Program-made: the position numbers and the translations under genes
Part shown: positions 23,374 to 52,502 of the stretch, in pieces
Layout of the letters: the number at the start of each line of letters is the position of its first letter
How positions within the stretch are numbered: the first letter of the stretch is position 1
Notes under the pieces: generated by a model
Seen by the model: the letters and a program-made list of their open reading frames with translations, nothing else
Database searches by the model: none
What the model was told of the DNA's origin: nothing
IMG/VR virus record: IMGVR_UViG_3300023179_005186
Coordinates: 124,001 to 188,000 of that record
Strand: one strand, 5' to 3'
DNA: 64,000 nt

Positions 23374-23393
23374 ATAATTTACATCTTGAAGAT

Positions 23394-23866
23394 TTAAAAA
23401 TGCCTAACTTCGTAAGCGAGTAAAGTTGCAGACAAAATCTGGCTAACCTAGCAAGCGAGTAAGGTTGCAGACAAAGTCAGGCTAACCTCGCAAGCGAGTA
23501 AAGTTGCAGACAAAGTCAGGCTACCGATTTTTATTATAAAATCTACTTAAAGAAATATTACAAATATATATATTTGTAATGAATAAACCTTTTTAGATTT
23601 GCTATTAATCGATAGCCTGACTTTGTCAGCAACCTGATAAATTAGGCAAATGGTTAGGTTATAAAAAAAAAGTTTATTTTCAATTTTTGATGAAAATGAT
23701 GAACTAAAAAAGATATTACTTATAATGAAAATGATTTACCAGAAGATTTAAGATATTTTACTGAACAAGCTGAACCAGCTAAAATTTAATTATTTACATT
23801 TTGATTATTTTTAATCGATTCATATATAACATATTTTATTTATAAATTCATTTTTATATAAATTAA
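23394..23866 (+). repeat. 473-bp direct repeat, copy 1
   Basis: Identical by eye to 25915-26387 (offset 2521); starts and ends with TTAA. Confidence 0.95.
23404..23523 (+). repeat. Three tandem 39-bp palindromic units (also at 25925-26044)
   Basis: Unit ctaacctcgcaagcgagtaaagttgcagacaaagtcagg; a partial inverted copy lies at 23613-23635. Confidence 0.92.
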
Positions 23867-24558
23867 GTGACATTGAAGCACCAATGATACAAACATTTCT
23901 TGATAGATTTTATAAAAACAGAACTGAAATCCGCATTTTACTTGAACAATATTTATCGCTTTTTGAAAATAATAATGATGAAAACTATTTTGGAATAATT
24001 AATTTAAAGAGTGAGCCTATTAAAATTATAAATAATATTATTAGCGATTTACAATTTATAATTAATCAAAATAGATTGGATATATTATTAGATGATATTA
24101 TAAAGGTGCATAATAATGTTAATATTAAAATACCATGTATGGAAAATTATCTTTATTATGTTATTTTTGAATTACTAAAAAATAGCACTCAAGCTGTTTT
24201 AGATAAAAGTAAAATTGAAAATAACTATAAACCATTTATTAATGTTAACATAAATAGTATTGATAGTAATTATATTCTCATAACAATAGAAGATAATGGT
24301 ATTGGTATAAAAGAAAAAAATATGGAAAAAATATGGTATTATAGTTTTACAACATCATTATTTGATTCTGAAAATATTATTGAAGAGAGTGATTTTAATA
24401 CAATAAGTCCTTTATCAGGTTTGGGATATGGATTACCAATATCTGAAATTTACATAAATTTTTTAAATTCATCTAAAAATAATATAAAAATAAATAGTGT
24501 TTACAAAAAAGGAACGACGGTTTATCTATATGTAAAATGTTATAATGAATATTTATAA
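23867..24558 (+). pseudogene. 5'-truncated pyruvate/branched-chain ketoacid dehydrogenase kinase-like gene (GHKL)
   Basis: IQTFLDRFY..R..IR.L..Q, FELLKNS, IEDNGIGI, YSFTT, LSGLGYGLPIS and GTTVY. The N-terminal helical domain is missing and the frame runs back to the repeat junction. Confidence 0.8.
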
Positions 24559-24582
24559 ATATATAAAGAATTTATTAAATTA

Positions 24583-25719
24583 TTATTTTTCCATCATGTC
24601 TAAATATACATTTATAAGTTCTTTATAATTATTTGCATATAATAATCTTAAAAAATATTTTTCAGGAATATCTATTTTTCTCACTGAACACCATCCAAAA
24701 TATTTTTTAAATAATATTGGATGATAATATCTGAACTCTTCATTTATTTTATATAAAATATTATAAAAATAATCATAATTATTATAAAAAGTAGCTTTAG
24801 TTATTTTTTTATCAATTATTAGTTGATCAATACTTTTACTACTTTTCCTATATTTAAATATATATTGTAAATCTTTTTTATATTCTGGATATAGTTCTCC
24901 ATATTTTTCTATTGCATTTTTGAAAAATATTTCATTTTTATTCATTAGTTTCTTCATACCATTACACCATAAATTATTATTTATCCATGGTGATATCTTT
25001 TTTTTAGATTTAATACAATCTTCTATCATTTTTTCATAACTACTTAATAAACGGTATGTGCAAATAAATATTTCAGTAAAAATATGTTTATCTTTATCTA
25101 TTGAAAACATCTTTTTGTATGGATGTCTTTTATAATTTATACCAAACTTTTCATGAGTAACTTCGCCATAATCTATTGCAACACATTGAATTCCATAAAA
25201 TGGAACTTTGTAATTATTTAATGTAAAATATTTTTTTTTAGTTTTAGTTACCATTATATTTGTACCTACATGTAAATCATTATGAGAATAACCTCCGTTA
25301 TATAATATTAAAATTATTTTTATTATTTGTAATAGTATAGACAATCTTCTTTTTTTTGAAAGATTATATTTAGACTCATATTTATCTAATGTATATTTAC
25401 CACAATAATCCATTAAATATTTAACACATAATTGTGATTTTTTTGTTTTTTCTGTTTTTAATTTATCTGTAATATTTTGATAACAGTCATTATTTATTTC
25501 AAAATTATATAAATTTACAAAAAAACTTTTATCTTCATTATTTAACTTAGATATATAATTAAACAAATCAAGTTCTCTAAATATTTTATTTTTAAAACTT
25601 TTTTTTCTTTCATTGTTTAAAATATGTTCAATTTTTAATGCATATTTTTTATCTTTATATTTTACCAAATATGTTTTACCAAAAGTACCTTCACCTAATT
25701 TTTTTATAATTTTTAACAT
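24583..25719 (-). CDS. Protein kinase-like protein
   Basis: LGEGTFGKTY, ALK, HNDLH...N and IDYG. Confidence 0.85.
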   Translation of the reverse strand: MLKIIKKLGEGTFGKTYLVKYKDKKYALKIEHILNNERKKSFKNKIFRELDLFNYISKLNNEDKSFFVNLYNFEINNDCYQNITDKLKTEKTKKSQLCVKYLMDYCGKYTLDKYESKYNLSKKRRLSILLQIIKIILILYNGGYSHNDLHVGTNIMVTKTKKKYFTLNNYKVPFYGIQCVAIDYGEVTHEKFGINYKRHPYKKMFSIDKDKHIFTEIFICTYRLLSSYEKMIEDCIKSKKKISPWINNNLWCNGMKKLMNKNEIFFKNAIEKYGELYPEYKKDLQYIFKYRKSSKSIDQLIIDKKITKATFYNNYDYFYNILYKINEEFRYYHPILFKKYFGWCSVRKIDIPEKYFLRLLYANNYKELINVYLDMMEK

Positions 25720-25796
25720 ATTATAAAATATAGTTATAATATTTTTATCAAAAAGTATATAAAATATTTTTGATTATAATATATTATAATCAAAAA

Positions 25797-25928
25797 ATGT
25801 CATTTTACCATGAAATTATAGATAATTTATATTTAGGAAGTGTTGAAGCATCAAAAGATGACGACTTTATATACAATAAAAAAATAGATGTTATTGTAAA
25901 TTGTTCAAAAGATCTTAAAAATGCCTAA
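25797..25928 (+). pseudogene. 3'-truncated dual-specificity phosphatase
   Basis: MSFYHEIIDNLYLGS...IDVIVNCSKDL, cut by repeat copy 2; no HCxxGxxR. Confidence 0.75.
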
Positions 25929-26387
25929 CTTCGTAAGCGAGTAAAGTTGCAGACAAAATCTGGCTAACCTAGCAAGCGAGTAAGGTTGCAGACAAAGTCA
26001 GGCTAACCTCGCAAGCGAGTAAAGTTGCAGACAAAGTCAGGCTACCGATTTTTATTATAAAATCTACTTAAAGAAATATTACAAATATATATATTTGTAA
26101 TGAATAAACCTTTTTAGATTTGCTATTAATCGATAGCCTGACTTTGTCAGCAACCTGATAAATTAGGCAAATGGTTAGGTTATAAAAAAAAAGTTTATTT
26201 TCAATTTTTGATGAAAATGATGAACTAAAAAAGATATTACTTATAATGAAAATGATTTACCAGAAGATTTAAGATATTTTACTGAACAAGCTGAACCAGC
26301 TAAAATTTAATTATTTACATTTTGATTATTTTTAATCGATTCATATATAACATATTTTATTTATAAATTCATTTTTATATAAATTAA
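25915..26387 (+). repeat. 473-bp direct repeat, copy 2
   Basis: Identical by eye to 23394-23866. Confidence 0.95.
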
Positions 26388-26407
26388 ATTATATTATATA
26401 AATAATT

Positions 26408-26800
26408 ATATCAGATTACAAACAAAAATATCTTAAATACAAACACAAGTACTTAACATTTAGAAATAATATGTATAAACAAAATTGAGTTTCTAAGGAT
26501 GGAATATATGTATTTTTTATTACTAATAATATAAATAATTGGAACTTATATTTTGAAAAATTTATTTATGTTCTTGTGTGATGTATTTTATGGTTGGTTC
26601 AACTTTAACAAGTATAAATATGTTAAACACTTATAAAACTATATCCAAATGAATTAAATGTTGACACCAATACTTGTAATTTAGTTGCTGTTTTTTCAAA
26701 TAATCTTCCTAGTAAAAACTATAAAGATATTACAGTAGAAAAATTGTAAAACATAAAAAAAGAAATCGAAAAATAAGAATAACCTACAAATTAAAGAAAT
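26408..26800 (+). pseudogene. Decayed tandem paralog of ORF 26938-27639
   Basis: (ATA)SDYKQKYLKYKHKYLT, KDGIYVFF, NTYKT and NTC fragments with stops and frameshifts; 3' limit is approximate. Confidence 0.75.
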
Positions 26801-26937
26801 TAATATTATATCTAATATTAAAAGGTAAAATAACAATAAAAGAACATATAAAGTAAATTAAGAGGGAAAATTATATTATCAATAAATATTTAATTATAAC
26901 AGATTTTTTTATAAAAATAATATATATATAATAAATT

Positions 26938-27639
26938 ATGCCAGATTATGAACAAAAGTATTTTAAATACAAAAATAAGTATTTAACATTAAAAAGTAAT
27001 TTAGAAGCACAAACAGGAGGTAATTATTATATGGATGGATATTATGTTTTCTTCATCTATGATCATGATTATAGTAATCCTGATAATACAGTTGTACCAA
27101 ATGATGACTATAAAAAAGATCAACATTATGGAAGAATAAGCATGGATAATTTTACATCAAAAAAAATAAATAATTGTTCCATGTTTTTTAGAATTAGTGA
27201 TGGTAAGTTAGCATTCAACCGAAATGATTCTTTTAATACTTATAATACAGTTTATCCTAATATATCTAATATATATGCTATTGCACCAAAATTTTCTTCA
27301 CAAGCTGAAAATACGTGTCCTTTTAAATCATTTAGATCATCTCAACTTCCTATTTCATCAAGCATGAATTTTAATTTAGACTTTAATATATTAAAAAGTA
27401 TTATAGATGAAATGAAAACAAATATAGCAGACAAGTCTAATAATTTTAAATCAATTTTAGTAGTTAGAAATACAAATGGTTATGTTCAAGTAAGAGCAAG
27501 GTACAAAGTAGTAGAAGGTACCGTGACACAAACACAGGAAGATAGAACTCATCAAACTACACCTTCTGAAAATACTGCACCTCCTGAAAATATTCCACCT
27601 CCTAAACCAGCAAGACATCAAAATCAAAATCAAAATTAA
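26938..27639 (+). CDS. Hypothetical protein with YxxKYxKYKxKYL..LK N-terminal motif
   Basis: MPDYEQKYFKYKNKYLTLK...QTGG, a leader common in Mimiviridae. Confidence 0.75.
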   Translation: MPDYEQKYFKYKNKYLTLKSNLEAQTGGNYYMDGYYVFFIYDHDYSNPDNTVVPNDDYKKDQHYGRISMDNFTSKKINNCSMFFRISDGKLAFNRNDSFNTYNTVYPNISNIYAIAPKFSSQAENTCPFKSFRSSQLPISSSMNFNLDFNILKSIIDEMKTNIADKSNNFKSILVVRNTNGYVQVRARYKVVEGTVTQTQEDRTHQTTPSENTAPPENIPPPKPARHQNQNQN

Positions 27640-27722
27640 AGAAAAATAAAAATCAAATATTTATTGTTCAATTATAAAAAATTAGCTTTGTACCATATTG
27701 GTGTAAAAAATAATGCTTATAC

Positions 27723-27958
27723 TTATTTATTTAAGATTGATTGAATGCCAAGTGAATAAGCATAAGGAGTATTACCATCAGGACAAGTAGAATCAATATC
27801 AGCATTCCATGTTATAACTCCCAACAAACCTTTATTAACATCAAATGTAGTTGAGTTTAGAGAATCTTCTAAAGAAAGAACTCTTGAGATGTCATCGGGA
27901 ACCAGACATAAGCCCGGAAATCATTTTTGGTTGGATCAACTTTCCAATTATTTAAATA
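27723..27958 (-). pseudogene. C-terminal remnant of a GH18 chitinase-like gene
   Basis: Frameshifted YLNNWKVDPTK / MISGLM / ...KGLLGVITWNADID...DGNTPYAYSLGI*, resembling the GH18 beta7-beta8 GxMxW motif. Confidence 0.55.
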
Positions 27959-28169
27959 ATAGAGTTTGATACAAAATGATACAAAATCATACACACGCAA
28001 ACGTGCAAATTATGATTTTGTTAAGGTGACAATCCTAACTGATTTATTGACAGTTGTCTCATTTTAAATCTTCAAGGTTGTAAAAAGGGTCTTACTCTAA
28101 ATATTTTTTTTAACAAAATTTGAAATTTACTAATAATATTTATAAGTAAATTATTATACATATATAATC

Positions 28170-30545
28170 ATGAGTAAATTATTAATAGTTGAATCTCCTG
28201 GAAAAATAAAAAAAATAACAGAATATTTAGGAAATGATTATATTGTAGCTGCATCAGTTGGACATATTATTGATTTAGATGAAAGATCAATGAGTATTGA
28301 TTTAGAAACTTTTGAACCTCAATATAGAGTTTATCCAAATAAAGTTGATGTTGTTAATAAATTAATAAAACTATCTATTAAAGTTGGAAAAGAAAATGTA
28401 TTTTTAGCTGCCGATGAAGATCGTGAAGGAGAAATGATAGCATGGTCTTGTGCTAAAGAATTAAAATTAAAAAATTCTAAAAGAATTGTTTTTAATTCTA
28501 TAACAGCAAAAGAACTTAAAAATGCTGTTGCAACTCCAAAAGAAATTGATCAAAATTTAGTAAAGGCTCAACAAGCTAGAAGAATTTTAGATAGATTAGC
28601 TGGATATCTAATTAGTCCTATTCTTAAAAAAAATGGTTTTTATGAAGCAAAATCTGCAGGAAGAGTTCAATCTGTTGTAGTAAAAATTGTTGTTGATAAA
28701 GAACGTGAAATAGAAGAATTTTATAAAAAACAAAAATCTACATACTTTTATATCAGTTGTGATATTAATATAAGTGATTATGAATTATCTACAAAATTAG
28801 TTAATAAAAATACTAAAATTGAAATATTAGATAAAGATAATGAAAATTTAGATAATTCTAATAATTTATCTGATGAAGAAACTGATAAAAAATTAAAAAA
28901 TAAAAGAGAAACTAAACAATCTTCAAAAATAAATAATGTTTCAATTAAATCGTATGTTACATTTGATAAATCTGAAGAACAAAATGTTGTTAAATTAATT
29001 AAAGCAATGATGAAAGGTGAATATTCTTTATTAAATAAAACTGAAAAAATTAGAAAAGCAAATGCTCCTCCTCCTTTTACTACTTCTACATTACAACAAT
29101 TAGCTTCACAAAGATTAAATTTAAATGCAAAAGAAACTATGAGTATTGCTCAAAAATTATATGAAGCAGGTCATATAACATATATGAGAACAGATTCAAC
29201 AGCTATATCAGATGAAGCATCAAATTTAATTAAAGATGTTATTAAATCAGAGTATGGATCAGAACATCATGAAAAACATACTTTTGTTAATAAAAAAGCG
29301 AATACTCAAGAAGCTCATGAATGTGTAAGACCAACAAAACCACAATTTGATAACATAGATGCTTCATTTAATGAAAAACGTCTATATAGTATTATTTGGA
29401 AACGTACAATTCAATCACAAATGAAAGCTGCAGAATATCAAAATATTTTGCTTGAAATTCAAATTGATGATAAAAAAAAAATGCTAGAAAATTATAAATT
29501 AGTTGGAACATTAGAGAATTTAATATATGAAGGGTATTTATTAGTTGATAATAAAAAGAAATCTAATCCATTAGATACAAAAAAACTAAAATCTATACAA
29601 TGGATTGATATTTATGGAATTGAAGATACTCAGAAACCACCTACTAGATATAATGATGCTTCATTAATAAATAAAATGGATCCAAAAAATCTTAATATTG
29701 GTAGACCATCGACTTATGCATCATTTATTGAAAAAATACAAGAAAGAAATTATGTAAAAATATGTGATATTGAAGGAAAAAAAATTCAATTAAATAGATA
29801 TAATGCAAATAAATCTGATCTAAAACAAATTAACATGGAAACTAAAGATTTGATTTTAGGAAAAGAAAAGAAAAAATTAGTTCCTACTGAACTTGGTATA
29901 AACGTGACTACATTTTTAGAAAAAAACTTTGAACTATTAATGGATTATAAATTTACAGCAAATATGGAAAAAGAATTAGATGATGTAGCAGAAGGTGAAT
30001 TAAATAATATTAAAATTATAAAAAAATTTTATGAATATATTATTAAATGTCTTAATGAAATTATACCTACTCCAGGTCAAAATCTTTTAACAAATTCTAT
30101 TATTCTAGGTAATTTTAATCAAGAAGATATTAAATTATTAAATGGAAAACATGGAAGATATATTCAATGTGGTAAATTTAATTATAATTTTCTTAAACTT
30201 TTAGAAGAACTTTGTATAAAAGAAAATGAATATGAATCTAAAACTAATTTATTATGTGATAGCATAATTCAAAAAATAAATAATCCTGGGAAACAATGGA
30301 AAATTGGAAAAAATATTTATACACTTGCTAAAGGTCAATTTGGATATTATATAAAAGAAACAAGTTCTTCTAATAAAAAAAATAAAAATTATTCTTTAAA
30401 CTTTATTATTGATAAAATTGCTAAAGAAAATAAAATAGATTTAAAAAATTCTAAATCTATTGATGTAATATTAGATATTATTAATGATCAGCATATTATT
30501 GAAATAACTGAATATTATAAAAATACTAAAAATAATAAAAAATAA
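28170..30545 (+). CDS. topA: DNA topoisomerase IA (bacterial type)
   Basis: LIVESPGK, ADEDREGE, SAGRVQS, GHITYMRTDS (catalytic Tyr), QEAHECVRPT and IGRPSTYA. Confidence 0.96.
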   Translation: MSKLLIVESPGKIKKITEYLGNDYIVAASVGHIIDLDERSMSIDLETFEPQYRVYPNKVDVVNKLIKLSIKVGKENVFLAADEDREGEMIAWSCAKELKLKNSKRIVFNSITAKELKNAVATPKEIDQNLVKAQQARRILDRLAGYLISPILKKNGFYEAKSAGRVQSVVVKIVVDKEREIEEFYKKQKSTYFYISCDINISDYELSTKLVNKNTKIEILDKDNENLDNSNNLSDEETDKKLKNKRETKQSSKINNVSIKSYVTFDKSEEQNVVKLIKAMMKGEYSLLNKTEKIRKANAPPPFTTSTLQQLASQRLNLNAKETMSIAQKLYEAGHITYMRTDSTAISDEASNLIKDVIKSEYGSEHHEKHTFVNKKANTQEAHECVRPTKPQFDNIDASFNEKRLYSIIWKRTIQSQMKAAEYQNILLEIQIDDKKKMLENYKLVGTLENLIYEGYLLVDNKKKSNPLDTKKLKSIQWIDIYGIEDTQKPPTRYNDASLINKMDPKNLNIGRPSTYASFIEKIQERNYVKICDIEGKKIQLNRYNANKSDLKQINMETKDLILGKEKKKLVPTELGINVTTFLEKNFELLMDYKFTANMEKELDDVAEGELNNIKIIKKFYEYIIKCLNEIIPTPGQNLLTNSIILGNFNQEDIKLLNGKHGRYIQCGKFNYNFLKLLEELCIKENEYESKTNLLCDSIIQKINNPGKQWKIGKNIYTLAKGQFGYYIKETSSSNKKNKNYSLNFIIDKIAKENKIDLKNSKSIDVILDIINDQHIIEITEYYKNTKNNKK

Positions 30546-30554
30546 TAAATAAAT

Positions 30555-31316: not shown

Positions 31317-31381
31317 TATTATTATAATAAATAAATATTATATATTAAAATCAATTTTTATATAAAAAACGTTAATAAATT

Positions 31382-32080
31382 TTATTTTTCGATAAATGTA
31401 TTCCAAAATGAATCACATACTGAACAAATATATCTGGTAGAATAAGATCCTTTTTTTCTATAAAATATGGCATTTTTTAATTTTGGTTCTTTATGTGTTG
31501 AACACTTATCGTTAATACAAGTATATTTTTTTGTATTTGGTAAAGTAGGATCATTTTTATAATTTATAAAATTAAAATTATAAAGATCATCTTTTTTTTC
31601 ATCACCTCTTGAAAATATGAACATTTTATCAGGAATAATTTCATAATAACCACATGTCTTACAATAAAAATAACATTCTTTATTTACAACACTATCAGTT
31701 GATTTTGATATTTGACCAATTTCTTTATTTAATTTTTGATTAATTTTATTAATTAAAATAGTTTTTTCTATATTTGATAATTTATTAAAATTTGGATTTT
31801 TTGTTAATTCTTCAAAATTTATTTTTTTAATTTTTTTTTCTTTATCTTCATCATCTGATTCTTCTGAATAATCTATTTTACCACCTAAAATACTTTCAAT
31901 TAATTCATTATTTATATTCATATTTGTATTAATAGTATCAGTATCTGTTTCTTCTGTTGAATTAAAACCAGATGAATTTGAAAAACCATTAGTATCATCA
32001 TATTCATTTTCTTGTCTTTTTTCAAAAGAAATAATATTGTTTGTTATATCCATAAAATTTTGACATATCTTGCAAAACAT
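31382..32080 (-). CDS. RPB9: RNA polymerase subunit 9
   Basis: MFCKICQN...YCKTCGY...DPTLP...CINDKC...YICSVC. Confidence 0.85.
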   Translation of the reverse strand: MFCKICQNFMDITNNIISFEKRQENEYDDTNGFSNSSGFNSTEETDTDTINTNMNINNELIESILGGKIDYSEESDDEDKEKKIKKINFEELTKNPNFNKLSNIEKTILINKINQKLNKEIGQISKSTDSVVNKECYFYCKTCGYYEIIPDKMFIFSRGDEKKDDLYNFNFINYKNDPTLPNTKKYTCINDKCSTHKEPKLKNAIFYRKKGSYSTRYICSVCDSFWNTFIEK

Positions 32081-32262
32081 TTGACTTATATATATTTATA
32101 TATATTATATTATTCTAAATTCATTTTTTTATTAAATATTAAATTTTTTTATCATCTTAAATGCAGTAAAATTATTTTATTACTTTCTAATCTCTTCTTA
32201 ACCTAATTTTTATATTAAAAATTGATTTTAATATAAAATAATTATATAGTATATAGATTAAT

Positions 32263-35200: not shown

Positions 35201-35271
35201 AAGGGTCTATAGTTAAAGGTATTAAATTAAAAGCTCAAGAAGAACGTAAATTAGTAAATGATTTAATTTAA
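32263..35271 (+). CDS. D5-like primase-helicase
   Basis: AEP motifs LDFDL and DGFHVHY, PriCT-2 (YNDWIVVGWAL), and SF3 helicase WTGCGSNGKG...ACNRLP...VWRRIRVVDF; AAAATTGA at 32218-32225. Confidence 0.95.
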   Translation: MSNNMYKEDDKDHKKYNNFENHGLENKKSVIQRINYLNLQEYIEANKTVEKSGLETHQQWVGDAVSRENGIFNINFKVNDDDYEEFIKLYIKECLKNYGRMNIMEKPREIGPLVLDFDLKQTTSQRKLTSNEIMQVIECINDTIMKYFSFNDNEILESYILMKERPFYNKKNTNYSDGFHVHYPKLYLSIEDRFLIFEESKQEIINKNLFSEVFNVLCSTDDFKNKNSSDNETEELINDYKTLDEENFDYVKNFYEQLSEKEKNEVHDSVFDSSPIKKNKWFLYGSGKNIGGKFNLYEVKYIFDYNAELIDEIPEKEELINLLAIRWNYEVKVKPRKKSDYLNVIEYIRTKYINKNKINMNQAFLKSDKVNIQSEDIISLDEKYMKSTNVENKFNYKANENENFKKIKDEIDITKKLVKLLSANRAYNYNDWIVVGWALFNIDCTLLNEFIEFSKKASTKFKIGECEKIWKQCEDRRDINGEGNGYTIASLYHWAKEDNFSGYKNLMSEKINALLDNGNINTDFDVAYIIFTMYQYEYVCSSICKNIWWQFKDHKWSRIEEAYTLSKKMSEEVCRKFAELAADCYSQSNKESIAGYKSDLLRQKALNIGKLVERLKKSSFKQTIIKECSLLFYWENFEKEMDQNNYLVGFDDGVFDLQSGKFRNGYPDDLISKTVGYKYKNYTIDHPIIKDIEKFMKSIQPEEDMKRFVLCYCASLFEGGNKDQRFMIWTGCGSNGKGTLINLLSKTLGKYYGTVPPTFLTQKRGNSSQATPELADKYGTRLLTTQEPENTDSIHIGFMKNITGGDEIMARPLYGDPFTYVPQFKLVMACNRLPNIPEGGDGGVWRRIRVVDFGQKFVDKPNAPNEHPKDRDLPEKLPKWTQAFTWLLLNIYYPIYKKYKDIDEITPAIVFTATKKYEMDTNVYMEFINETIEFDDSESIDKSDLWGYFKHWHSTSYDGVKIPHMKKFYTYLDNNNFKIKGSIVKGIKLKAQEERKLVNDLI

Positions 35272-47126: not shown

Positions 47127-47132
47127 AAATTT

Positions 47133-48494
47133 TTATATTGACTTTATTATTTTAATTATATCAGTTGTTGAAATTTCATTAAATCTAGATATGTATTTAT
47201 AATTATTTAATTCGAATGCTCCTGGATACCATTCCTTGTCTTTATTTCCTTTATATTCTTCACCTATGATTACTACATCATATTCACCTTTTTCTATTAA
47301 ATCTTTTGTTATTACTAACGGATAATTTTCTACTATTTCATCTACATATTTACATAATTCGACAGTTTTATATCTAATTTTTTCATTAATAATTGGTTTT
47401 CTTTTATAATTTGCACATACATCATCTCCATGAACTCCAACTATTAATTTTATTGGAACATTAAATGACTCATAAATTTTTTTAAATAATATCATATGTC
47501 CTAAATGACACATATCAAATACTCCACAACAAAATACTCTTAATTTAGTTTCTTTTACTATAAACAGATTTATTTTTAATTCATTTGCAATCCTATTCAT
47601 AATGTTTATAACATAGTTTATTATTATTGGTGTTAGTAATATTGGATTTAATGTAAAAATACAAGGAAAAATACATAATAAATTACTTGATCTTTTTTTA
47701 AAAATTTTAAATGTTATTAATTCTAATAATAAAATTGAATCAACTATGGTTATTGTCCATATAAATTTTGTTGGATATATTATAATTGAAATATACTTTA
47801 TTAAATACCAAACACCTATAAAAAAACCTAATTTAATATTACTAGAATTTGCATTTTTTTCATATATTAATTTTAATAATTTACAAATATTTAATAATAA
47901 TATTCCACCTATAAATAAAAATAAAATATTGTTATTTATTAATATTTTTGGTAATTTTAATCCACATAAAAATACTAGTGATGTTGTTGTTAGAATTAAA
48001 GATACATCTGTTAAACCTTCAAATATAATTTTTCCTTTAATAATTGCCTCATAATGTGGTATCATAAAATGAAAACTTCCTGCTGTTAATAAATAATTTG
48101 ATATATTTTGATCAACTTCAAAATGATACATTAAACAATCGAAAATAATTCCAGCATTTACTAAATCAATTATATGATCTAAATATTCTCCAATTATTGA
48201 TGTATTTTTTATATTTCTAGCATGTATACCATCTATAGCATCAAAATTCATATATAAAAAAACACATATACCCATTATCATATTTGAAGAATAATTTTTA
48301 AAAATATTATAACCAAAAATTACTGATATTAATCCTAATAATGTAATTATATTTGGATGAATATATTTTGGTATCATTTTTTGTACTAATTCCCAAAAAA
48401 ATCTATATCTTTTTGTTAAAAATGTATTGTCTACAGATACATATTTATATTTTTTATAAAAATCTAAATTTTCAATTGATAAATATTTTTTCAT
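47133..48494 (-). CDS. Fusion of choline/ethanolamine phosphotransferase (CDP-alcohol phosphotransferase) and cytidylyltransferase
   Basis: YKYVSVD...PNIITLLG and DAIDGIHAR...SIIGEYLDHIID; C-terminal GVFDMCHLGH, LIVGVH.D, KYVDE and RFNEISTTDII. Confidence 0.9.
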   Translation of the reverse strand: MKKYLSIENLDFYKKYKYVSVDNTFLTKRYRFFWELVQKMIPKYIHPNIITLLGLISVIFGYNIFKNYSSNMIMGICVFLYMNFDAIDGIHARNIKNTSIIGEYLDHIIDLVNAGIIFDCLMYHFEVDQNISNYLLTAGSFHFMIPHYEAIIKGKIIFEGLTDVSLILTTTSLVFLCGLKLPKILINNNILFLFIGGILLLNICKLLKLIYEKNANSSNIKLGFFIGVWYLIKYISIIIYPTKFIWTITIVDSILLLELITFKIFKKRSSNLLCIFPCIFTLNPILLTPIIINYVINIMNRIANELKINLFIVKETKLRVFCCGVFDMCHLGHMILFKKIYESFNVPIKLIVGVHGDDVCANYKRKPIINEKIRYKTVELCKYVDEIVENYPLVITKDLIEKGEYDVVIIGEEYKGNKDKEWYPGAFELNNYKYISRFNEISTTDIIKIIKSI

Positions 48495-48589
48495 TAATAT
48501 TATAACTTTGAAAAAATTTAAATTATTTATATTTATTAAAAAAAAAATATATATAAAATCAAAATAGATATCATTATTTATAATATTGA

Positions 48590-49870
48590 ATGCAAATAGA
48601 TAGTAAAAAACTTACTAATAATTTTAAAAGTTGTATTTTATTAAATGAAAATACAAATAATAATAAATCAGATTTGCAAAATAATAAAGAAAAAAAAAGA
48701 AATGAAAAAAATAAGTTTGATGAATCAAAAGATATTTTAGATCAATCTGAACGAATGCCTGCAAAAAAAATTAAATTTTTTCTTAAAAATTCACAGAATA
48801 TTGATGATGAATCAGAATATACTAATACTCCTAAGGCAAAATTTCATTGTGATAATATATTATGTGATCATAAAAAATATTTTCCTAAATGGTATGAATT
48901 AAATAAAATAAATTTAACAAAAATTAATACATTAGATGATCTTATGAAATTAGCAGAGTATTATCATTGTAGAATGAGAAGAAATTATAATGGTATTGAT
49001 CTTAAAATATTATTTGAAATTACTAATTATCTAAAAGAATTAAATTCAATGATTGGATTAAATATTCTAAAAGAAGAAATTGTTAATATGATTATTTATT
49101 TAATGATTATTAAAAATTCAGATAAAGGTTTAACTCCTGATATGCTTCATGCTGTTGTTACTGGAAGTCCTGGTTGTGGTAAAACAACTTTTATTGAAAT
49201 TGTTGCAAAGATTTATACAAAACTTGGTGTTTTAAAAAAAGGTCATATTGTTAAAGCAAAACGTTCAGAATTAATTGGAAAATATCTAGGTCATACTGCT
49301 GTACAAACTCAACAAAAAATTAATGAGGCAAAAGGTGGAATTTTATTAATTGATGAAGCGTATTCTTTAGGTAATCCCGAAGGTAGAGATTCTTTTTCAA
49401 AAGAATGTATTGATACCTTAAATCAAGCACTTTCTGAAAACAAAGATGACTTTATTTGTATTATTGCTGGATATAAAAATGCATTAGATAGTTCTTTTTT
49501 TAATTATAATGAAGGATTAAGACGAAGATTTCCATTTAGATTTGATATCAAAACTTATACTGCTGAAGAATTAACATTAATATTTATGAAAAAAATTACT
49601 GAACACAATTATTGGATAATTGAATTTAAGAATGAAGAAGTAGAAGAAATAATAAAAAAAAATTTTAAATTATTTGAAAATCAAGGTGGTGATATTGAAT
49701 CACTTTTTTTAAATTTAAAAATTGTTCATAATAAAAGGGTATTTTTATTACCTATTATTGAAAAAAAAAAATTATTAATTATTGATGTAAAAGAATCTAT
49801 TGAAAAATTTATTAAATTAAAAGGTGATTATATCAATAAATATGAAACACCATTTGGATTATACGTTTAA
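48590..49870 (+). CDS. AAA+ ATPase (CbbX/SpoVK-like)
   Basis: GSPGCGKTT, LIGKYLGHT, ILLIDEAYSL, IIAGY and NEGLRRRF. Confidence 0.9.
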   Translation: MQIDSKKLTNNFKSCILLNENTNNNKSDLQNNKEKKRNEKNKFDESKDILDQSERMPAKKIKFFLKNSQNIDDESEYTNTPKAKFHCDNILCDHKKYFPKWYELNKINLTKINTLDDLMKLAEYYHCRMRRNYNGIDLKILFEITNYLKELNSMIGLNILKEEIVNMIIYLMIIKNSDKGLTPDMLHAVVTGSPGCGKTTFIEIVAKIYTKLGVLKKGHIVKAKRSELIGKYLGHTAVQTQQKINEAKGGILLIDEAYSLGNPEGRDSFSKECIDTLNQALSENKDDFICIIAGYKNALDSSFFNYNEGLRRRFPFRFDIKTYTAEELTLIFMKKITEHNYWIIEFKNEEVEEIIKKNFKLFENQGGDIESLFLNLKIVHNKRVFLLPIIEKKKLLIIDVKESIEKFIKLKGDYINKYETPFGLYV

Positions 49871-49899
49871 AAAATTTTTATATAAATAATAAATATAAA

Positions 49900-50282
49900 T
49901 TTGTTCAAAAACTTTCTTTTTACTTTAACTCTAAAGATTCTGAATTTATTGTTAATACACAAAATATTAGTACAAAGCTAAATAATTTAATTCAACAAGT
50001 TATTATTAGAACTCCTATTTATAATAAATGTGGAAAAAAATTGAATATAAAGCTAATAAGTTTCTTCTACAGAAATGCTTGTTAGAATTTATAATACATA
50101 CTTTATTGAAGGAAAAGGAACAATTAATTGGAAATACTCATTTATCAACGATAAACCTAATTTTTTATATCCTGTAGGTGTAATGGCTGAATCAAATATA
50201 GTGTTAGGCACTGGTATTTTTTTAATTTGAAAGGTAGTTACATTATATCCTACTCATGATTTATTAAAAAATGTAAAAATAT
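49900..50282 (+). pseudogene. Degraded ORF abutting element B
   Basis: Frameshifted coding-like segments TPIYNKCGKK and YNTYFIEGKGTINWKYSF...VLGTGIF; limits are approximate. Confidence 0.45.
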
Positions 50283-50284
50283 TA

Positions 50285-50548
50285 CACCCATTTACAAAAA
50301 AATGGGACAGTTTTATTTATGTTTTTTTAAAAATTCATTTGCTCTTAAAAAAGAAAGACCTTTAAAATATAAAAGGAATTATGATTTAGAAAAAGGAGAG
50401 ATAATAAAAGAAATAAAACAAAAGGTGATAACCCCTAACAAAAATGACACTACAAATCAGGGGGTCAAGTATCAACCAAGCCTATAATAGGTGCAATTAT
50501 GCCTTTAATTTACAAATTAAGAGTGTCCCACTTTTTTGTAAATGGGTG
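50285..50548. mobile_element. Element B: 264-bp MITE-like element with TA duplication
   Basis: TA|CACCCATTTACAAAAAAATGGGACA ... TGTCCCACTTTTTTGTAAATGGGTG|TA; TIRs match at 24 of 25 positions. Confidence 0.88.
50424..50523 (+). ncRNA. Candidate structured RNA (omega-RNA-like) abutting the right TIR of element B
   Basis: Stems ggtgata/tatcaacc, acccct/gggggt, gccta/taggt and ttaatt/aattaa. Confidence 0.4.
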
Positions 50549-50614
50549 TAATAAATAATATAAAATTAATATTTTTTAACAAAAAAATTTTTATATAACC
50601 CTTATATATATAAA

Positions 50615-50707
50615 ATGTCAGAATTAGCTAAAAATATATTAATTGGTATCGCTATCTTTTTTGCTATTATTTTTTTATTATATATTATATTAGTGGCAGA
50701 TAAATAA
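50615..50707 (+). CDS. 30-aa single-TM micropeptide (below the ORF-track cutoff)
   Basis: MSELAKNILIGIAIFFAIIFLLYIILVADK*. Confidence 0.5.
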   Translation: MSELAKNILIGIAIFFAIIFLLYIILVADK

Positions 50708-50774
50708 AAAATTTTTTTTAAAATAAAAAATTTTAATAATTTATTTAAATTTTTAATATATATTTTAAATTATA

Positions 50775-51608
50775 ATGTCTAATCCTACAAATAGTTCATC
50801 TAATATTAGTAATAAAAGATGTATAAGTAAATTTTATTTTGGTACAAAAGATTCAAATCCTTTTGTTTACCATAATAAAGATACTGAAAAAAAAAAATCT
50901 ATTAATAAAAAAAGAAAACATAAAAATGATGAATCTGATAATGAAGATGAAGATGAAGAAAGTGATGATCCTTTTACAATAAACAAAATATTTTATGAAA
51001 ATAAAATATTTCTTAAGGAAAATCATTTGTATTTTCATACTAATGTAAATCAAAAATCTTGTGAACTAGTTAAACAATTAATGAGAACTTATAGTTCTAA
51101 ATTTAATAAATTACAAAAAACTCATACTTGTGTTAAATTTGAATGTAAGCCATTGTATATACATATATATTCTCCAGGAGGAGATGTTTATGCAGGTCTT
51201 GCTCTTTATGATTTTATAATACAATATCGTGAACATATTCCTATCTATACAATTGTAGAAGGAATTGCTGCTAGTGCAGCAACATTTATTTCTGTTGCTG
51301 GAACAAAGAGATTTATTACACCAAGTTCATATATGTTAATTCATCAACTTTCCACATTTATGTATGGAAACTTTGAACAATTAAAAGACGAATTTGATAA
51401 TTCAAAAAAACTTATGGATAAAATTATGAATATTTATTCAGAACATACTACTATTACAAAAAAACGTATTCCTAAAATACTTAAGCATGATTTAATTTGG
51501 GATGCTGAAGAATGTGTTCAAAATGGACTTGTTGATAAAATTAAATTAGTCGACTTGTTTAATGATGAAGATAAAGATGATGATCAAGAAGAAAATAATG
51601 AAGAATAA
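50775..51608 (+). CDS. clpP: ClpP-like serine protease
   Basis: IYSPGGDV, GIAASAA (Ser), MLIHQ (His) and HDLIWDAEEC..GLVD (Asp). Confidence 0.9.
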   Translation: MSNPTNSSSNISNKRCISKFYFGTKDSNPFVYHNKDTEKKKSINKKRKHKNDESDNEDEDEESDDPFTINKIFYENKIFLKENHLYFHTNVNQKSCELVKQLMRTYSSKFNKLQKTHTCVKFECKPLYIHIYSPGGDVYAGLALYDFIIQYREHIPIYTIVEGIAASAATFISVAGTKRFITPSSYMLIHQLSTFMYGNFEQLKDEFDNSKKLMDKIMNIYSEHTTITKKRIPKILKHDLIWDAEECVQNGLVDKIKLVDLFNDEDKDDDQEENNEE

Positions 51609-51666
51609 AATTTATTTTTACTTAATATATTAAATATTACATTAAATATAATATATGTTTAATTTA

Positions 51667-51693
51667 GAGCGGTGCGTATTTTAAATGCCGATT
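51667..51693 (+). mobile_element. Solo TIR-like end (element D)
   Basis: TA|GAGCGGTGCGT-ATTTTAAATGCCGATT; same 11-nt spacing to ATTTNAAAYG as the ends of A and C; no partner seen. Confidence 0.5.
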
Positions 51694-51836
51694 TTAATGA
51701 CAAAAAAAATATTTATAACTAGATGAATTTAAGATCATTAATAACATAAAATAGTTTATTATCTATACAGATGATAAATATTTATTAACATATTTTATTT
51801 TAGATGTTAAATAGATGTAATAAATATACTAAATAA

Positions 51837-51886
51837 TCTGGTCTTAAGACCATAAAATTTTAAAAATATTCATAGTTTAAGATGAT
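51837..51886 (+). repeat. 50-bp unit; intact copy of the site interrupted by element C
   Basis: 45/50 identical to 51919-51945 joined to 52505-52527. Confidence 0.85.
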
Positions 51887-51945
51887 ATTTAAGAGGATTT
51901 AGAATTTTTATTTAGATTTCTGGTCTTGAGATGATAAAGTTTTTA

Positions 51946-52502
51946 CACCTTTTCTCATTTGAAACGCCCATTTATAATAAAAAAAATTGAAACACTTTTA
52001 TTATATTGTACTATTATTACATAAAACACATTTATCTGTAAAATGTATGCCGTTGTTAGATATAACGATTATCGTAAAGAACAAGATTTTGAAATCATTG
52101 CAACTACTACTGATGTAGAATATGCTAAAAAAATAGCATTTAATAAAATCAAAGAAAACATACAAAACATGCCTGAATGTAAAAATGACGATGAACTTTA
52201 TAAAATAGAAACATATATTGAAACAGAATATTTCCAACCAATAAATAAAGAAATAATATCTTATAGAATTATCAAAGTAAAAAAGTGTAAAAACAAATTC
52301 AAAAAAATATATCATTATACAACTAAATATGCTGTTGTTGAATTTGCAGTAGGAAATTCTGAAAATTTAGAAGAAATAGATACTTCTCTCATATGTGATG
52401 ATTATATTATTGATGACGATGAATAAAAAGCAAATAAAAATGGAGGGAAACCTCTTTTTTTATTTACTCCCATAATGTGGGCGTTTTAAATGAGAAAATG
52501 TG
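51946..52502. mobile_element. Element C: 557-bp TIR element carrying one cargo gene
   Basis: TA|CACCTTTTCTCATTTGAAACGCCCA ... TGGGCGTTTTAAATGAGAAAATGTG|TA; TIRs match at 23 of 25 positions. Confidence 0.9.
52043..52426 (+). CDS. Hypothetical cargo protein of element C
   Basis: 127 aa; own AAAATTGA at 51983-51990 and a 3' hairpin gagg-gaaa-cctc. Confidence 0.8.
   Translation: MYAVVRYNDYRKEQDFEIIATTTDVEYAKKIAFNKIKENIQNMPECKNDDELYKIETYIETEYFQPINKEIISYRIIKVKKCKNKFKKIYHYTTKYAVVEFAVGNSENLEEIDTSLICDDYIIDDDE

What the first reader, a model, noticed from the sequence alone, without database searches (positions are those of the whole stretch)
23382..52502. Family of transposase-less TA-TIR elements acting as gene cassettes in a giant virus
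Seen: three paired elements (A 23382-28080, B 50285-50548, C 51946-52502) and one solo end (51667) all begin directly after TA, and the paired ones end directly before TA. The outer ~11 nt is element-specific (CAACCTTGAAG, CACCTTTTCTC, GAGCGGTGCGT) and is followed by a shared ATTTNAAAYG core. Element B keeps the CAC start and an AAATGGGACA inner end. Contents range from a whole gene to assorted fragments, and all sit between core genes. Established: TA duplication plus short TIRs starting with CA is the Tc1/mariner-IS630 signature. Inference: one trans-acting transposase family mobilises many non-autonomous 'pack' elements that shuttle genes among giant viruses. The core would be the binding site and the outer block would define subfamilies.
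Basis: partly seen in the sequence, partly recalled or inferred. Interest (0 to 1): 0.85.

Follow-up and report, generated by a model that had tools for sequence, protein, structure and literature searches.

The report
Mariner-type transposon cassettes in giant virus
Four short segments of this giant-virus genome are transposase-less relatives of already known cut-and-paste mariner/IS630 transposons that carry the RNA-guided nuclease Fanzor1, and two of them have picked up viral genes, which shows a concrete way genes can be moved between giant viruses.

Summary
A (23382-28080), B (50285-50548), C (51946-52502) and the solo end D (51667) are TA-flanked ends of four related TIR families. Each recurs in other giant-virus contigs, with similarity stopping at the TA.

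- **Autonomous relatives.** Full-length relatives of all four families encode a Fanzor1 nuclease. The A, C and D ones also encode a DD34E/DD35E IS630-Tc1/mariner transposase. The B-type transposase lies beside a B end elsewhere on this contig. The C family is probably the PGv-1 "Mariner" element of Phaeocystis globosa virus (Bao & Jurka 2013).
- **B** is an internal-deletion MITE.
- **C** is a TIR-promoter-gene-TIR cassette that recurs in an unrelated context.
- **A** is a 4.7-kb insertion absent from two related contigs. It holds 2 kb of captured viral DNA between duplicated element sequence, joined at microhomologies.
- **Wider pattern.** 27 C-type and about eight A/D-type single-ORF elements carry 29 unrelated cargo families.

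The family is not transposase-less, the kind is known, and the roles proposed for the core and outer block are untested. Verdict: new variant of a known kind; interest about 0.6.

The parts
23380..23381 (.). TA flanking the left end of A (target-site duplication)
   Evidence: The empty site in related contig L242 has a single TA here.
23382..23402 (+). A-type left TIR, degenerate: CATCTTGAAGATTTAAAAATG against family consensus CACCCTTGAAGATTTAAAATG
23414..23523 (+). 39-bp G+C-rich tandem array (2.8 copies) just inside the left TIR. One inverted copy lies at about 23603-23632. A second copy of the array lies at 25935-26044.
   Evidence: Folds strongly (z -8.8). Found only in this contig within IMG/VR.
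23389..23874 (+). R1: left-terminal 487 bp of element A. It includes a 59-bp stretch shared with the 286-bp A-type MITE in L197.
23868..25912 (.). X: captured 2.04-kb chunk of viral DNA with genes truncated at both edges
   Evidence: The native locus, with full-length genes, is in L233 (95% nt) and in L234/L236 (90-93% nt). Junction microhomologies are shown.
23884..24558 (+). C-terminal 224 aa of a PDK/BCKDK-like kinase. The N-terminal ~140 aa are missing.
   Evidence: Pfam BCDHK_Adom3 profile positions 118-160 only, plus HATPase_c. The full 364-aa gene is in L233.
24583..25719 (-). Complete protein-kinase-like gene (378 aa) inside X
   Evidence: 96% aa identity in L233.
25798..25928 (+). N-terminal ~39 codons of a dual-specificity phosphatase gene, fused to element sequence and then a stop
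   Evidence: The full 177-aa DSPc gene is in L236. Junction shown.
25909..26395 (+). R2: second copy of the 487-bp left end (99.2% identical), lacking the outermost ~10 nt of the TIR
26356..26470 (+). Decayed duplicate of the promoter and first codons of the 233-aa ORF
   Evidence: 78% identity to 26889-27000
26938..27639 (+). 233-aa ORF of unknown function inside A
   Evidence: no Pfam match
27700..28000 (-). Frame-broken gene remnant with higher G+C
28053..28080 (-). A-type right TIR: CAACCTTGAAGATTTAAAATGAGACAAC
28081..28098 (.). TA, then 14 nt absent from related contig L242, then a second TA. The true right edge of the insertion is 28080 or 28096.
50285..50548 (+). B: 264-bp internal-deletion MITE of a B-type transposase + Fanzor1 element. 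TA lies at 50283-50284 and 50549-50550.
50285..50309 (+). B left TIR. It contains an internal hairpin, CCCATTT/AAATGGG.
50316..50351 (-). Last 12 codons of the B-type transposase gene, 100% identical to L010 on the same contig
50352..50523 (+). Last ~45 codons and 3' untranslated region of a Fanzor1 gene. This is where Fanzor guide-RNA scaffolds are encoded.
   Evidence: 80% nt identity to L002 over 222 bp. FzB residues 678-693 match. Alignment A1.
50524..50548 (-). B right TIR
51667..51740 (+). D: solo end, the Fanzor-proximal end of a D-type element, preceded by ATTTA
51838..51895 (+). Uninterrupted paralogue of the C target region, with a single TA inside TTTTAAAA
   Evidence: Read. Direct repeat D8. 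About 82% identity to the two flanks of C.
51946..52502 (+). C: 557-bp non-autonomous C-type (probably PGv-1 family) cassette. TA lies at 51944-51945 and 52503-52504.
51983..51990 (+). AAAATTGA early-promoter motif, 60 nt upstream of the cargo ATG, inside C
52043..52426 (+). Cargo gene of C: 127 aa, a member of a widespread giant-virus family of unknown function

Best explanation
The four features are non-autonomous members of four sister families of IS630-Tc1/mariner cut-and-paste transposons that live in Mimiviridae-like giant viruses.

The full-length elements:
- Full-length relatives of the A, C and D types carry 25-28-bp TIRs, an HTH + DD34E/DD35E transposase and a Fanzor1 RNA-guided nuclease.
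- The paired B-type elements found carry Fanzor1 and a C2H2 zinc-finger gene. The B-type transposase was seen only beside a single B end.
- They often carry extra cargo as well.
- They insert at a TA inside TTTAAA (or ATTAAT for B) and duplicate that TA.

How the window copies would move (inferred): they have no transposase, so a cognate transposase must act in trans on their TIRs. A B-type transposase gene is on the same contig. The other types would need a copy elsewhere in the genome or in a co-infecting virus.

How each window copy arose:
- B: internal deletion of a transposase + Fanzor1 element. It keeps both TIRs, the last 12 transposase codons and the 3' end of the Fanzor1 gene.
- C: the interior was replaced by a complete viral gene with its own early promoter. 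The unit TIR-promoter-ORF-TIR then moved as a whole.
- A: an older element inserted between a 411-aa gene and topoisomerase IA. A replication or repair event copied its left 487 bp, switched template at a 9-nt microhomology into a PDK-kinase-phosphatase locus, copied 2 kb, and switched back at a 7-nt microhomology into the TIR core. The result is TIR-R-X-R-Y-TIR.
- D: a one-ended remnant.

Shown here: element anatomy, family membership, TA duplication, the empty site for A, the native source of X, and cassette recurrence. Inferred: trans-mobilisation, the template-switch mechanism, and any role for Fanzor1.
For: Ends and TA:
- Ends read. Recurrence with sharp boundaries and TA flanks.
- Target logos from 161 (C), 36 (A), 14 (B) and 55 (D) distinct flanks.
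- Nearly all of the 75 TIR-paired elements listed in fetched loci have TA on both sides.

Autonomous relatives between the same TIRs:
- L070 and L018 (C), L150 and L166 (D) and L183 (A) carry both a transposase and a Fanzor1. L011 and L002 (B) carry Fanzor1 and a zinc-finger gene but no transposase.
- Pfam DDE_3 and HTH_28. D-D-E columns in alignment A2; the DD34E/DD35E spacing is my residue count on the ORF translations.
- Fanzor1 by match to 8GKH, 9CER and 9CF0, E 1e-24 to 6e-29.
- Over the N-terminal ~60 residues, the PGv-1 Fanzor printed in the supplement of PMC3627910 is about 80% identical by eye to the L018 protein. PGv-1 is described there as 4442 bp with a 29-bp TIR, TA duplication and a Mariner transposase.

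B:
- Its left 67 bp (within a 72-bp perfect match that includes 5 flanking nt) are 100% identical to the end of L010, which lies on the same contig at 279497-281376. That stretch includes the last 12 codons of an intact 302-aa transposase gene.
- The right 222 bp are 80% identical to the Fanzor 3' end in L002.

C:
- The same cassette, with both TIRs and TA, is in L218 at 88.6% identity with unrelated flanks.
- A right TIR is present in L217 and L086.
- Homologous genes in L210-L216 and L219 lack C TIRs. Only L210 shows a possible remnant of the inner right TIR, abutted by an A-type element.
- The gene family has 130 clusters.
- AAAATTGA lies at -60. The same motif sits at -39 to -60 of 12/50 window ORFs against 1.3 expected, and inside 9/27 C-type cassettes (window C included).

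A:
- Related contigs L242 (89% aa) and L238 (81% aa) join the 411-aa gene directly to topoisomerase IA.
- An independent assembly, L240, reproduces the A structure.
- The native locus of X, with full-length genes, is in L233, L234 and L236.
- Microhomology junctions are shown.
- The 286-bp A-type MITE in L197 matches both ends of A.

Cargo diversity: 29 families in 36 elements.

Multi-copy nature: in the lake metagenomes, depth at the TIRs is 4 to 200 times the backbone depth and contigs break at the TIRs.
Against: - No transposition has been observed.
- No empty-site allele for B or C was found in the four lake runs examined. Those data are assembler contigs, which show presence rather than absence.
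- Cognate transposases of the A, C and D types were not shown in this genome.
- Both TIRs of A are degenerate, so A is probably no longer mobile.
- The L010 element has no detectable second TIR.
- The only full-length A-type transposase found (L183) has Y in place of the second catalytic D.
- The A-right boundary differs by 16 nt from the simplest TA model.
- All relatives are metagenome assemblies, which can switch between repeat copies. One independent assembly diverges from the window exactly at the right end of C.
Confidence: 0.85

Rival explanations
1. The inverted repeats are chance matches or shared promoter/terminator palindromes of a very A+T-rich genome, not mobile-element ends.
For: The 10-nt 'core' alone is at chance frequency. 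The window holds thousands of low-complexity inverted pairs. One 47-nt inverted pair, at 31323/32207, is simply two divergent AAAATTGA promoters.
Against: The exact 21-25-nt ends recur in dozens to more than 120 unrelated contigs, with similarity ending at TA. They enclose transposase and Fanzor genes elsewhere. Simulations give 0.34 such pairs against 11 observed.
Confidence: 0.01
2. The 'cassettes' are resident genes that happen to lie between two independent insertions or solo ends, so gene and TIRs do not move together.
For: Solo ends exist (D). Insertions are confined to short intergenic spacers. Homologues of the C cargo gene occur without C TIRs in several contigs. In L210 an A-type element abuts what may be a decayed C end.
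Against: The same TIR-gene-TIR unit is found with TA on both sides in unrelated flanks: window C against L218, L020 against L044, L089 against L115. Only two TIRs are present, in the outward orientation. The ORF plus promoter fills the element, and the stop codon often abuts the TIR.
Confidence: 0.07
3. The elements belong to another TA/TTAA-targeting superfamily (piggyBac, PIF/Harbinger, or the unclassified TTAN-duplicating Fanzor1 elements of insect viruses) rather than IS630-Tc1/mariner.
For: Flank conservation extends beyond TA, to TTTA|...|TAAA. Insect-virus Fanzor1 elements insert at TTTAN.
Against: The left flank ends TTTA and the right flank begins TAAA, so only TA is a direct repeat. 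The empty site of a related contig has a single TTTAAA. The enclosed transposases are Pfam DDE_3 with IS630-type HTH domains, with DD34E/35E spacing by my count on the ORF translations aligned in A2.
Confidence: 0.03
4. Block A is not one element. The PDK-kinase-phosphatase genes are at their native place, and two separate A-type fragments landed on either side with deletions.
For: Only one copy of the kinase gene was detected on the 315-kb contig. The TIRs of A are degenerate.
Against: Two related contigs join the flanking genes directly, so everything between the TIRs is extra. The native locus in L233 and L236 has different neighbours. The R-X-R layout with microhomologies at both junctions fits a single template-switch event.
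Confidence: 0.05

Closest known systems
[quoted passage not shown]
   Same: TA duplication, TIRs of about 29 bp, a Mariner/IS630 transposase, a Fanzor1 of about 625 aa, and extra cargo such as a nuclease or methyltransferase. Elements share TIRs and the transposase region but swap the rest. Over the N-terminal ~60 residues the C-type Fanzor is about 80% identical to the printed PGv-1 protein (by eye).
   Different: The window copies have no transposase and no Fanzor gene. Those authors described single-copy autonomous elements. They did not describe MITEs, single-gene cassettes or the A, B and D TIR types. The PGv-1 DNA was not on hand, so TIR identity was not tested.
Submariner MITEs of Pandoravirus salinus (Sun et al. 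2015, PMC4495683; Zhang et al. 2018, PMC6004678)
   Same: Non-autonomous Tc1/mariner derivatives with TA duplication that colonise a giant-virus genome.
   Different: Submariner's autonomous partner is in the amoeba host, and the MITEs carry no genes. Here the partners are viral and carry Fanzor1, and many derivatives carry a gene. The 2018 survey reported MITEs only in Ascoviridae, Polydnaviridae and Pandoraviridae.
Pack-MULEs and other transduplicating DNA transposons of plants (my own knowledge)
   Same: Non-autonomous TIR elements whose interior is captured host DNA, including gene fragments. Capture is attributed to template switching during gap repair, with microhomology at the junctions.
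   Different: A different superfamily (Mutator, 9-bp duplication). Plant captures are mostly fragments, whereas many cassettes here hold a complete promoter plus ORF.
Fanzor1-bearing transposons with a guide RNA encoded at the transposon end (SpuFz1; SfAV Fanzor1; PMC10530073 and bioRxiv 10.1101/2023.08.09.552727)
   Same: The autonomous relatives encode Fanzor1 reading towards one TIR. B keeps about 245 nt of that end, and its TIR is itself a hairpin, as described for the stem next to the guide.
   Different: There is no Fanzor gene in the window. No covariation or RNA evidence for a guide RNA was obtained.
Integron gene cassettes (analogy only; my own knowledge)
   Same: Small mobile units that each carry essentially one gene, with very diverse cargo.
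   Different: Integron cassettes use site-specific recombination at attC and are usually promoterless. These units use TIRs with a DDE transposase and often carry their own promoter.

Membership tests
IS630-Tc1/mariner (ITm) superfamily | Duplication of a TA target | tested here: met
   TA on both sides of A, B and C. TA flanks in 139/143, 52/52 and 15/15 family ends. Related contig L242 has a single TA at the A site.
IS630-Tc1/mariner (ITm) superfamily | Short terminal inverted repeats | tested here: met
   25-28-nt TIRs
IS630-Tc1/mariner (ITm) superfamily | DDE/D transposase with DD34E-type spacing and an N-terminal paired HTH domain | tested here: met
   Met in relatives bearing the same TIRs, and in L010 on the same contig: Pfam DDE_3, HTH_28 and HTH_Tnp_IS630; DD34E/35E by my residue count on the ORF translations aligned in A2. 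Not present in the window itself.
MITE (miniature inverted-repeat element), applied to B | Small size, TIRs plus target duplication, no functional coding capacity, derived from an autonomous element | tested here: met
   264 bp. It contains only the 3' stubs of the transposase and Fanzor genes.
MITE, applied to B | High copy number in the host genome | not tested
   Only the window and scattered loci of the 315-kb contig could be read. Exact B TIRs occur at two sites on the contig.
PGv-1 family (Repbase; Bao & Jurka 2013), applied to C | TIR and terminal DNA similar to PGv-1 | not testable with these tools
   The PGv-1 DNA sequence is not held. Only its proteins are printed in the supplement.
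PGv-1 family, applied to C | Cognate Fanzor1 and transposase closely related to those of PGv-1 | tested here: inconclusive
   About 80% identity over the N-terminal ~60 residues, by eye, between the printed PGv-1 Fanzor and L018 7225-9099. The transposase N-termini are also similar. No computed alignment was made.
Transduplicating (Pack-type) element, applied to A and C | Interior is host (here viral) DNA with a parental copy elsewhere | tested here: met
   A: the native PDK-kinase-DSP locus with full-length genes is in L233, L234 and L236. C: homologous genes without TIRs are in L210-L216 and L219.
Transduplicating (Pack-type) element | The captured unit transposes together with the TIRs | tested here: met
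   Met for C: L218 has both TIRs, TA on both sides and unrelated flanks. Not shown for A, for which only one site is known.
Fanzor1 / guide-RNA module | Fanzor1 gene (RuvC with zinc finger) inside the element | tested here: not met
   There is no Fanzor gene in the window. It is present in autonomous relatives.
Fanzor1 / guide-RNA module | Conserved structured RNA at the Fanzor-proximal end | tested here: inconclusive
   In seven B-type ends the predicted stems show mostly one-sided changes and the covariation term is only -0.91 kcal/mol. There is no Rfam match and no RNA enrichment over B.
piggyBac / PIF-Harbinger | TTAA or TTA/TAA target duplication | tested here: not met
   The flanks read TTTA|...|TAAA, so only TA is repeated directly.

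The most novel reading that the evidence does not exclude
Mimiviridae-like viruses of lakes and oceans may share a pool of TIR-promoter-gene-TIR cassettes. A few Fanzor1-bearing mariner/IS630 transposons would mobilise these in trans. The pool would then act as a general, integron-like gene-exchange system between giant viruses, fed continuously by template-switch capture of viral genes. Deletion derivatives such as B, which keep only the Fanzor-proximal end, might act as stand-alone guide-RNA genes that recruit Fanzor1 supplied in trans to defend or re-home their own insertion sites.
Probability: 0.3. Interest if true: 0.8.

Novelty: new variant of a known kind. Interest (0 to 1): 0.6.

Why it matters
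Giant-virus genomes are mosaics, and the mechanisms that move genes between them are poorly documented.

- **A concrete vehicle.** Here, non-autonomous mariner/IS630 elements carry single complete genes, each with a viral early promoter.
- **Scale.** 29 unrelated cargo families turned up in a small sample, including several methyltransferases, a CoiA-like nuclease and a hydrolase.
- **Movement.** The same cassette occurs in unrelated genomic contexts.
- **Capture caught in the act.** Element A records a capture event, with the donor locus and both microhomology junctions identified.
- **Link to Fanzor1.** These elements are tied to one of the most abundant Fanzor1 lineages in public metagenomes, with more than 1600 clusters at 90% identity. 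The biological role of Fanzor1 in transposon maintenance is still open.
- **Practical consequence.** These repeats break metagenomic assemblies of giant viruses. They may also create chimeric joins.

Tried and rejected
1. The 10-nt core as a statistical signal. It is at chance frequency. With TA-N11 in front there are 5 matches against 1.8 expected, reached by 5 of 100 shuffles. I replaced it with cross-genome boundary evidence.
2. Close relatives in IMG/VR through the ClpP-like neighbour of B, C and D. The best non-self hit was 43% identical, so no empty sites for B or C came from that route.
3. Empty-site alleles in four lake runs. Only assembler contigs are held. No joint coincided with an element edge, and one TIR-to-TIR joint reflects smaller family members.
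4. A Fanzor gene next to the L010 transposase on the source contig. The search did not return the contig. This gives no information, because only two N-terminal peptide patterns were used.
5. A second copy of the captured kinase in IMG/VR. Only the window's own copy was found. The metagenome scan then gave the native locus.
6. Guide-RNA structure in B-type ends. Support was weak and one-sided. There were no Rfam matches in the window.
7. Function of the C cargo protein. The model is confident (pLDDT 84.7) but has no significant structural neighbour in the PDB or BFVD. There was no Pfam match.
8. A name linking the C-type Fanzor to Phaeocystis globosa virus in the protein database. None of the listed hits carries a virus name; the only names given are 'hypothetical protein'.
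9. Virophage, transpoviron or polinton ends. Rejected because the TIRs are 25-28 bp, the duplication is TA, and the associated proteins are DDE_3 transposases and Fanzor1.

Full report
**Source and setting.** The window is positions 124001-188000 of IMGVR_UViG_3300023179_005186, a 315,722-bp lake-metagenome contig with about 20% G+C.
- It encodes hallmark genes of nucleocytoplasmic large DNA viruses: a D5-type primase-helicase, RNA polymerase Rpb5, an NAD-dependent DNA ligase and topoisomerase IA.
- Twelve of 50 ORFs have the Mimiviridae early-promoter octamer AAAATTGA 39-60 nt upstream of the ATG, against 1.3 expected. 'Giant virus, Mimiviridae-like' is therefore justified.
- The same virus, at 99-100% identity, is present in several independent assemblies and in lake runs from 2013 to 2024.

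**Checking the observation.**
- B has a 25-nt TIR with one mismatch and C a 25-nt TIR with two. The ends of A match over about 21 nt with one substitution and two 1-nt indels. D is a single end. All are bounded by TA.
- A simulation of TA-flanked 21-nt inverted pairs with at least 5 G/C gave a mean of 0.34 against 11 observed.
- The shared 10-nt core by itself is not significant: 11 matches against 13.4 expected.
- The strongest evidence comes from other genomes. In every case similarity stops at the TIR tip next to TA.
- From distinct insertion sites the preferred targets are TTTA| for C (161 sites), A (36) and D (55, with A at -5), and ATTA| for B (14). That is a TA inside a palindromic TTTAAA or ATTAAT.
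- The consensus TIRs are A CACCCTTGAAGATTTAAAATGGGACA, B CACCCATTTACAAAAAAATGGGACA, C CACCTTTTCTCATTTAAAACGCCCA and D GAGCGGTGCGTATTTTAAATGCCG. A, C and D share ATTT(A/T)AAA(T/C)G at nt 12-21, and A, B and C share the tip CACC. Its functional meaning is untested.

**What the families are.** Where two ends of one type face each other in other contigs, the larger elements carry recognisable transposon genes.
- The full-length A-, C- and D-type elements encode a 338-345-aa protein with Pfam HTH_28 and DDE_3 domains. Counting residues on the ORF translations, aligned in A2, gives DD34E spacing for the C type and DD35E for the D type.
- All four types encode a 620-720-aa protein that matches the solved Fanzor1 structures of Spizellomyces, Guillardia and Parasitella at E 6e-29 to 3e-24. 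Some carry further genes.
- The paired B-type elements (L011, L002) carry Fanzor1 and a C2H2 zinc-finger gene but no transposase.
- The literature already describes this kind. Bao & Jurka (2013, PMC3627910) reported PGv-1 of Phaeocystis globosa virus: 4442 bp, a 29-bp TIR, TA duplication, and a Mariner transposase with a GIY-YIG nuclease and a 625-aa Fanzor1. [quoted passage not shown]
- Over the N-terminal ~60 residues, the PGv-1 Fanzor printed in their supplement is about 80% identical by eye to the C-type Fanzor of L018. The C family is therefore very probably the PGv-1 family. I did not compute this alignment.
- The C-type Fanzor1 is extremely abundant, with more than 1600 clusters at 90% identity in public data.

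**No transposase or Fanzor gene lies in the window**. About 105 kb away on the same contig, however, L010 holds a B-type end followed by an intact 302-aa HTH + DDE_3 transposase gene with DD35E spacing by my count.

**Element B.**
- The leftmost 67 bp of B are 100% identical to the L010 end and include the last 12 codons of that transposase gene. The perfect match is 72 bp long and includes 5 flanking nt.
- The remaining ~200 bp are the last codons and 3' untranslated region of a B-type Fanzor1 gene plus the TIR, 80% identical to L002 over 222 bp.
- B is therefore a classic internal-deletion MITE, with its junction at 50351/50352.
- It keeps the region where Fanzor guide-RNA scaffolds are encoded, and its TIR is itself a hairpin (CCCATTT/AAATGGG). 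Fanzor1 elements of insect viruses have a conserved stem next to the guide, built from the TIR.
- My own test on seven sequences gave only weak, one-sided support for a conserved fold. The metatranscriptome run showed no enrichment over B.

**Element C.** Between its TIRs, C holds an AAAATTGA motif 60 nt upstream of a 127-aa ORF. Short hairpin-forming sequences that I read by eye follow the ORF, up to the TIR.
- The protein belongs to a well-conserved family of at least 130 clusters on giant-virus-sized contigs. A confident model has no informative structural neighbour.
- L218 has the same cassette with both TIRs and TA on both sides, 88.6% identical, in unrelated flanks.
- L217 and L086 keep the right TIR.
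- L210-L216 and L219 have homologous genes with no C TIRs. In L210 a possible remnant of the inner right TIR is abutted by an A-type element.
- The gene is therefore an ordinary viral gene that became enclosed by C-type ends, and the unit has moved.
- Next to C in the window, an uninterrupted paralogue of its target (51838-51895) shows a single TA where C sits in the second copy.
- In the RNA run, summed contig depth over the C ORF is 535-692 against 7-12 for neighbouring genes. This is suggestive only, because the family is multi-copy.

**Element A.** The A-type families include 270-300-bp MITEs. One of them (L197, 286 bp) matches both ends of window A.
- Two related contigs place the 411-aa gene (window 22138-23373; 89% and 81% aa identity) directly beside topoisomerase IA, with spacers of 78 and 27 nt.
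- L242 reads ataaataattTAaaatattttttt. The window reads ataaataattTA[23382...28080]TAaaaagggtcttactcTAaatatttttttt. The whole 4.7-kb block is therefore an insertion at a TA. An unexplained 16 nt remains at its right edge.
- An independent 524-kb assembly reproduces the internal structure.
- Inside, the left 487 bp occur twice at 99.2% identity (23389-23874 and 25909-26395). The second copy lacks the outer ~10 nt of the TIR.
- Between the copies lie the C-terminal 224 aa of a PDK/BCKDK-like kinase, a whole kinase-like gene and the first ~39 codons of a dual-specificity phosphatase.
- Metagenome contigs L233 (95% nt) and L234/L236 (90-93% nt) carry the same three genes contiguous and full length, with other neighbours.
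- At both junctions the element sequence and the native sequence share a microhomology: ATAAA(T/C)TAA at one and TTAAAAA at the other.
- The layout TIR-R-X-R-Y-TIR is what a double template switch during replication or gap repair produces. That is the mechanism usually invoked for gene capture by DNA transposons. The mechanism is my inference.
- The rest of A holds a decayed duplicate of a gene start, a 233-aa ORF and a broken gene remnant.
- A 3x39-bp G+C-rich array with one inverted copy sits just inside the left TIR. It is unique to this contig in IMG/VR and remains unexplained.

**The wider pattern.** Pairing TIRs in all fetched loci gave 75 listed elements, nearly all with TA on both sides.
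- The C type ranges from 76 bp to 4.46 kb. It includes ORF-less MITEs, Fanzor-only elements of 2.2-2.4 kb and two full transposase + Fanzor elements.
- There are 27 C-type single-ORF cassettes of 325-1923 bp, counting window C, plus about eight A- and D-type single-ORF elements.
- Thirty-six cargo proteins fall into 29 unrelated families. These include three Methyltransf_24 proteins, one FkbM-type methyltransferase, DUF3431, a CoiA-like nuclease, an alpha/beta hydrolase and an LRR protein. Most are unknown.
- Nine of the 27 C-type cassettes carry AAAATTGA 46-62 nt upstream of the cargo ATG inside the element. The stop codon often abuts the TIR.
- Besides C, the cassette pairs L020/L044 and L089/L115 and the MITE pairs L184/L194 and L138/L160 occur in unrelated flanks.

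**Limits.**
- All comparisons use metagenome assemblies.
- TIR regions are 4 to 200 times deeper than the viral backbone in the lake runs, and contigs break there.
- One independent assembly is 99.6% identical to the window up to 52507 and then continues into different genes. Repeat-mediated misassembly or real rearrangement therefore happens at these elements.
- No empty allele for B or C was found. Cognate transposases of types A, C and D were not shown in this genome. No activity has been demonstrated.

**Verdict.** The elements belong to a known kind: Fanzor1-bearing Mariner/IS630 transposons of Mimiviridae-related viruses. As far as the searched literature shows, three things are new:
- the non-autonomous derivatives in this virus group;
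- the abundance and diversity of single-gene, promoter-bearing cassettes;
- a capture event resolved to its donor locus and its junctions.

Noticed in passing
window 9299-16845: The RNA polymerase Rpb2 gene appears as a 1781-aa ORF (9299-14644), then a 1.1-kb gap, then a second 354-aa ORF (15781-16845). Pfam hits precomputed for the identical locus L240 show intein/Hint domains in the long ORF and Rpb2_6/7 domains in the short one. A 52-nt stretch near the end of the first ORF is repeated at 73% inside the second (D16). G+C rises to 0.29-0.33 here. This may be a split or partly duplicated gene with an intervening element.
   Followed up: partly
window 52503-52507 against L245 4235-4300: An independent 524-kb assembly of the same virus (ENA NODE_6) is 99.6% identical from 48275 to 52507. 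It diverges exactly at the right end of element C, into a DnaJ gene instead of the 267-aa ORF. This is either a recombination between C copies or an assembly switch at the repeat.
   Followed up: partly
window 23404-23655 and 25925-26176: A 39-bp G+C-rich tandem array (2.8 copies) plus one inverted copy forms a very stable hairpin (z -8.8). It lies just inside the left TIR of A and was found in no other IMG/VR contig. Its function is unknown.
   Followed up: partly
window, 12 ORF upstream regions (for example 22094, 32218, 35304, 45141): The octamer AAAATTGA lies 39-60 nt upstream of 12 of 50 ORFs (1.3 expected). This is the Mimiviridae early-promoter signature, although the octamer's overall count in the window is at chance.
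   Followed up: yes
window 31323-31369 and 32207-32253: A 47-nt inverted repeat (83% complementary) flanks the 232-aa gene at 31382-32080. Both arms contain AAAATTGA pointing outwards, so it is probably two divergent promoters rather than a mobile element.
   Followed up: partly
L210 1959-2360: A 402-bp A-type element with TA on both sides carries a 90-aa ORF. It abuts what looks like the decayed right end of a C-type cassette, after GGCGTTTTA. If real, this would be a nested insertion at the TTTAAA inside another element's TIR.
   Followed up: partly
L183 2194-3231: The only full-length A-type transposase found has Y in place of the second catalytic aspartate (ILYNAG against ILDNA), so that copy is probably inactive.
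   Followed up: no
L238 13413-17245: The D5 primase-helicase of the 81%-related genome is longer than 1392 aa and has a homing-endonuclease/Hint domain, so it contains an intein. The window's copy (32263-35271, 1002 aa) has none.
   Followed up: no
window 52013-52393 in RNA run X2: Summed contig depth over the C cargo gene in a lake metatranscriptome is 535-692, against 7-12 for neighbouring genes. In the DNA run X1 it is about 100-200 against about 20. This suggests high expression, but multi-copy relatives confound it.
   Followed up: partly
window 29103-29123 and 33138-33158: A TA-flanked 21-nt inverted pair with 2 mismatches lies inside the topoisomerase and primase genes. It is probably chance and matches none of the TIR families.
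   Followed up: no
L018 7225-9099 and database hits: The C-type Fanzor1 has more than 1600 clusters at 90% identity. The top 120 are 88-95% identical and nearly all 622-628 aa long, which suggests a very recent and wide spread of one Fanzor1 lineage among aquatic giant viruses.
   Followed up: no
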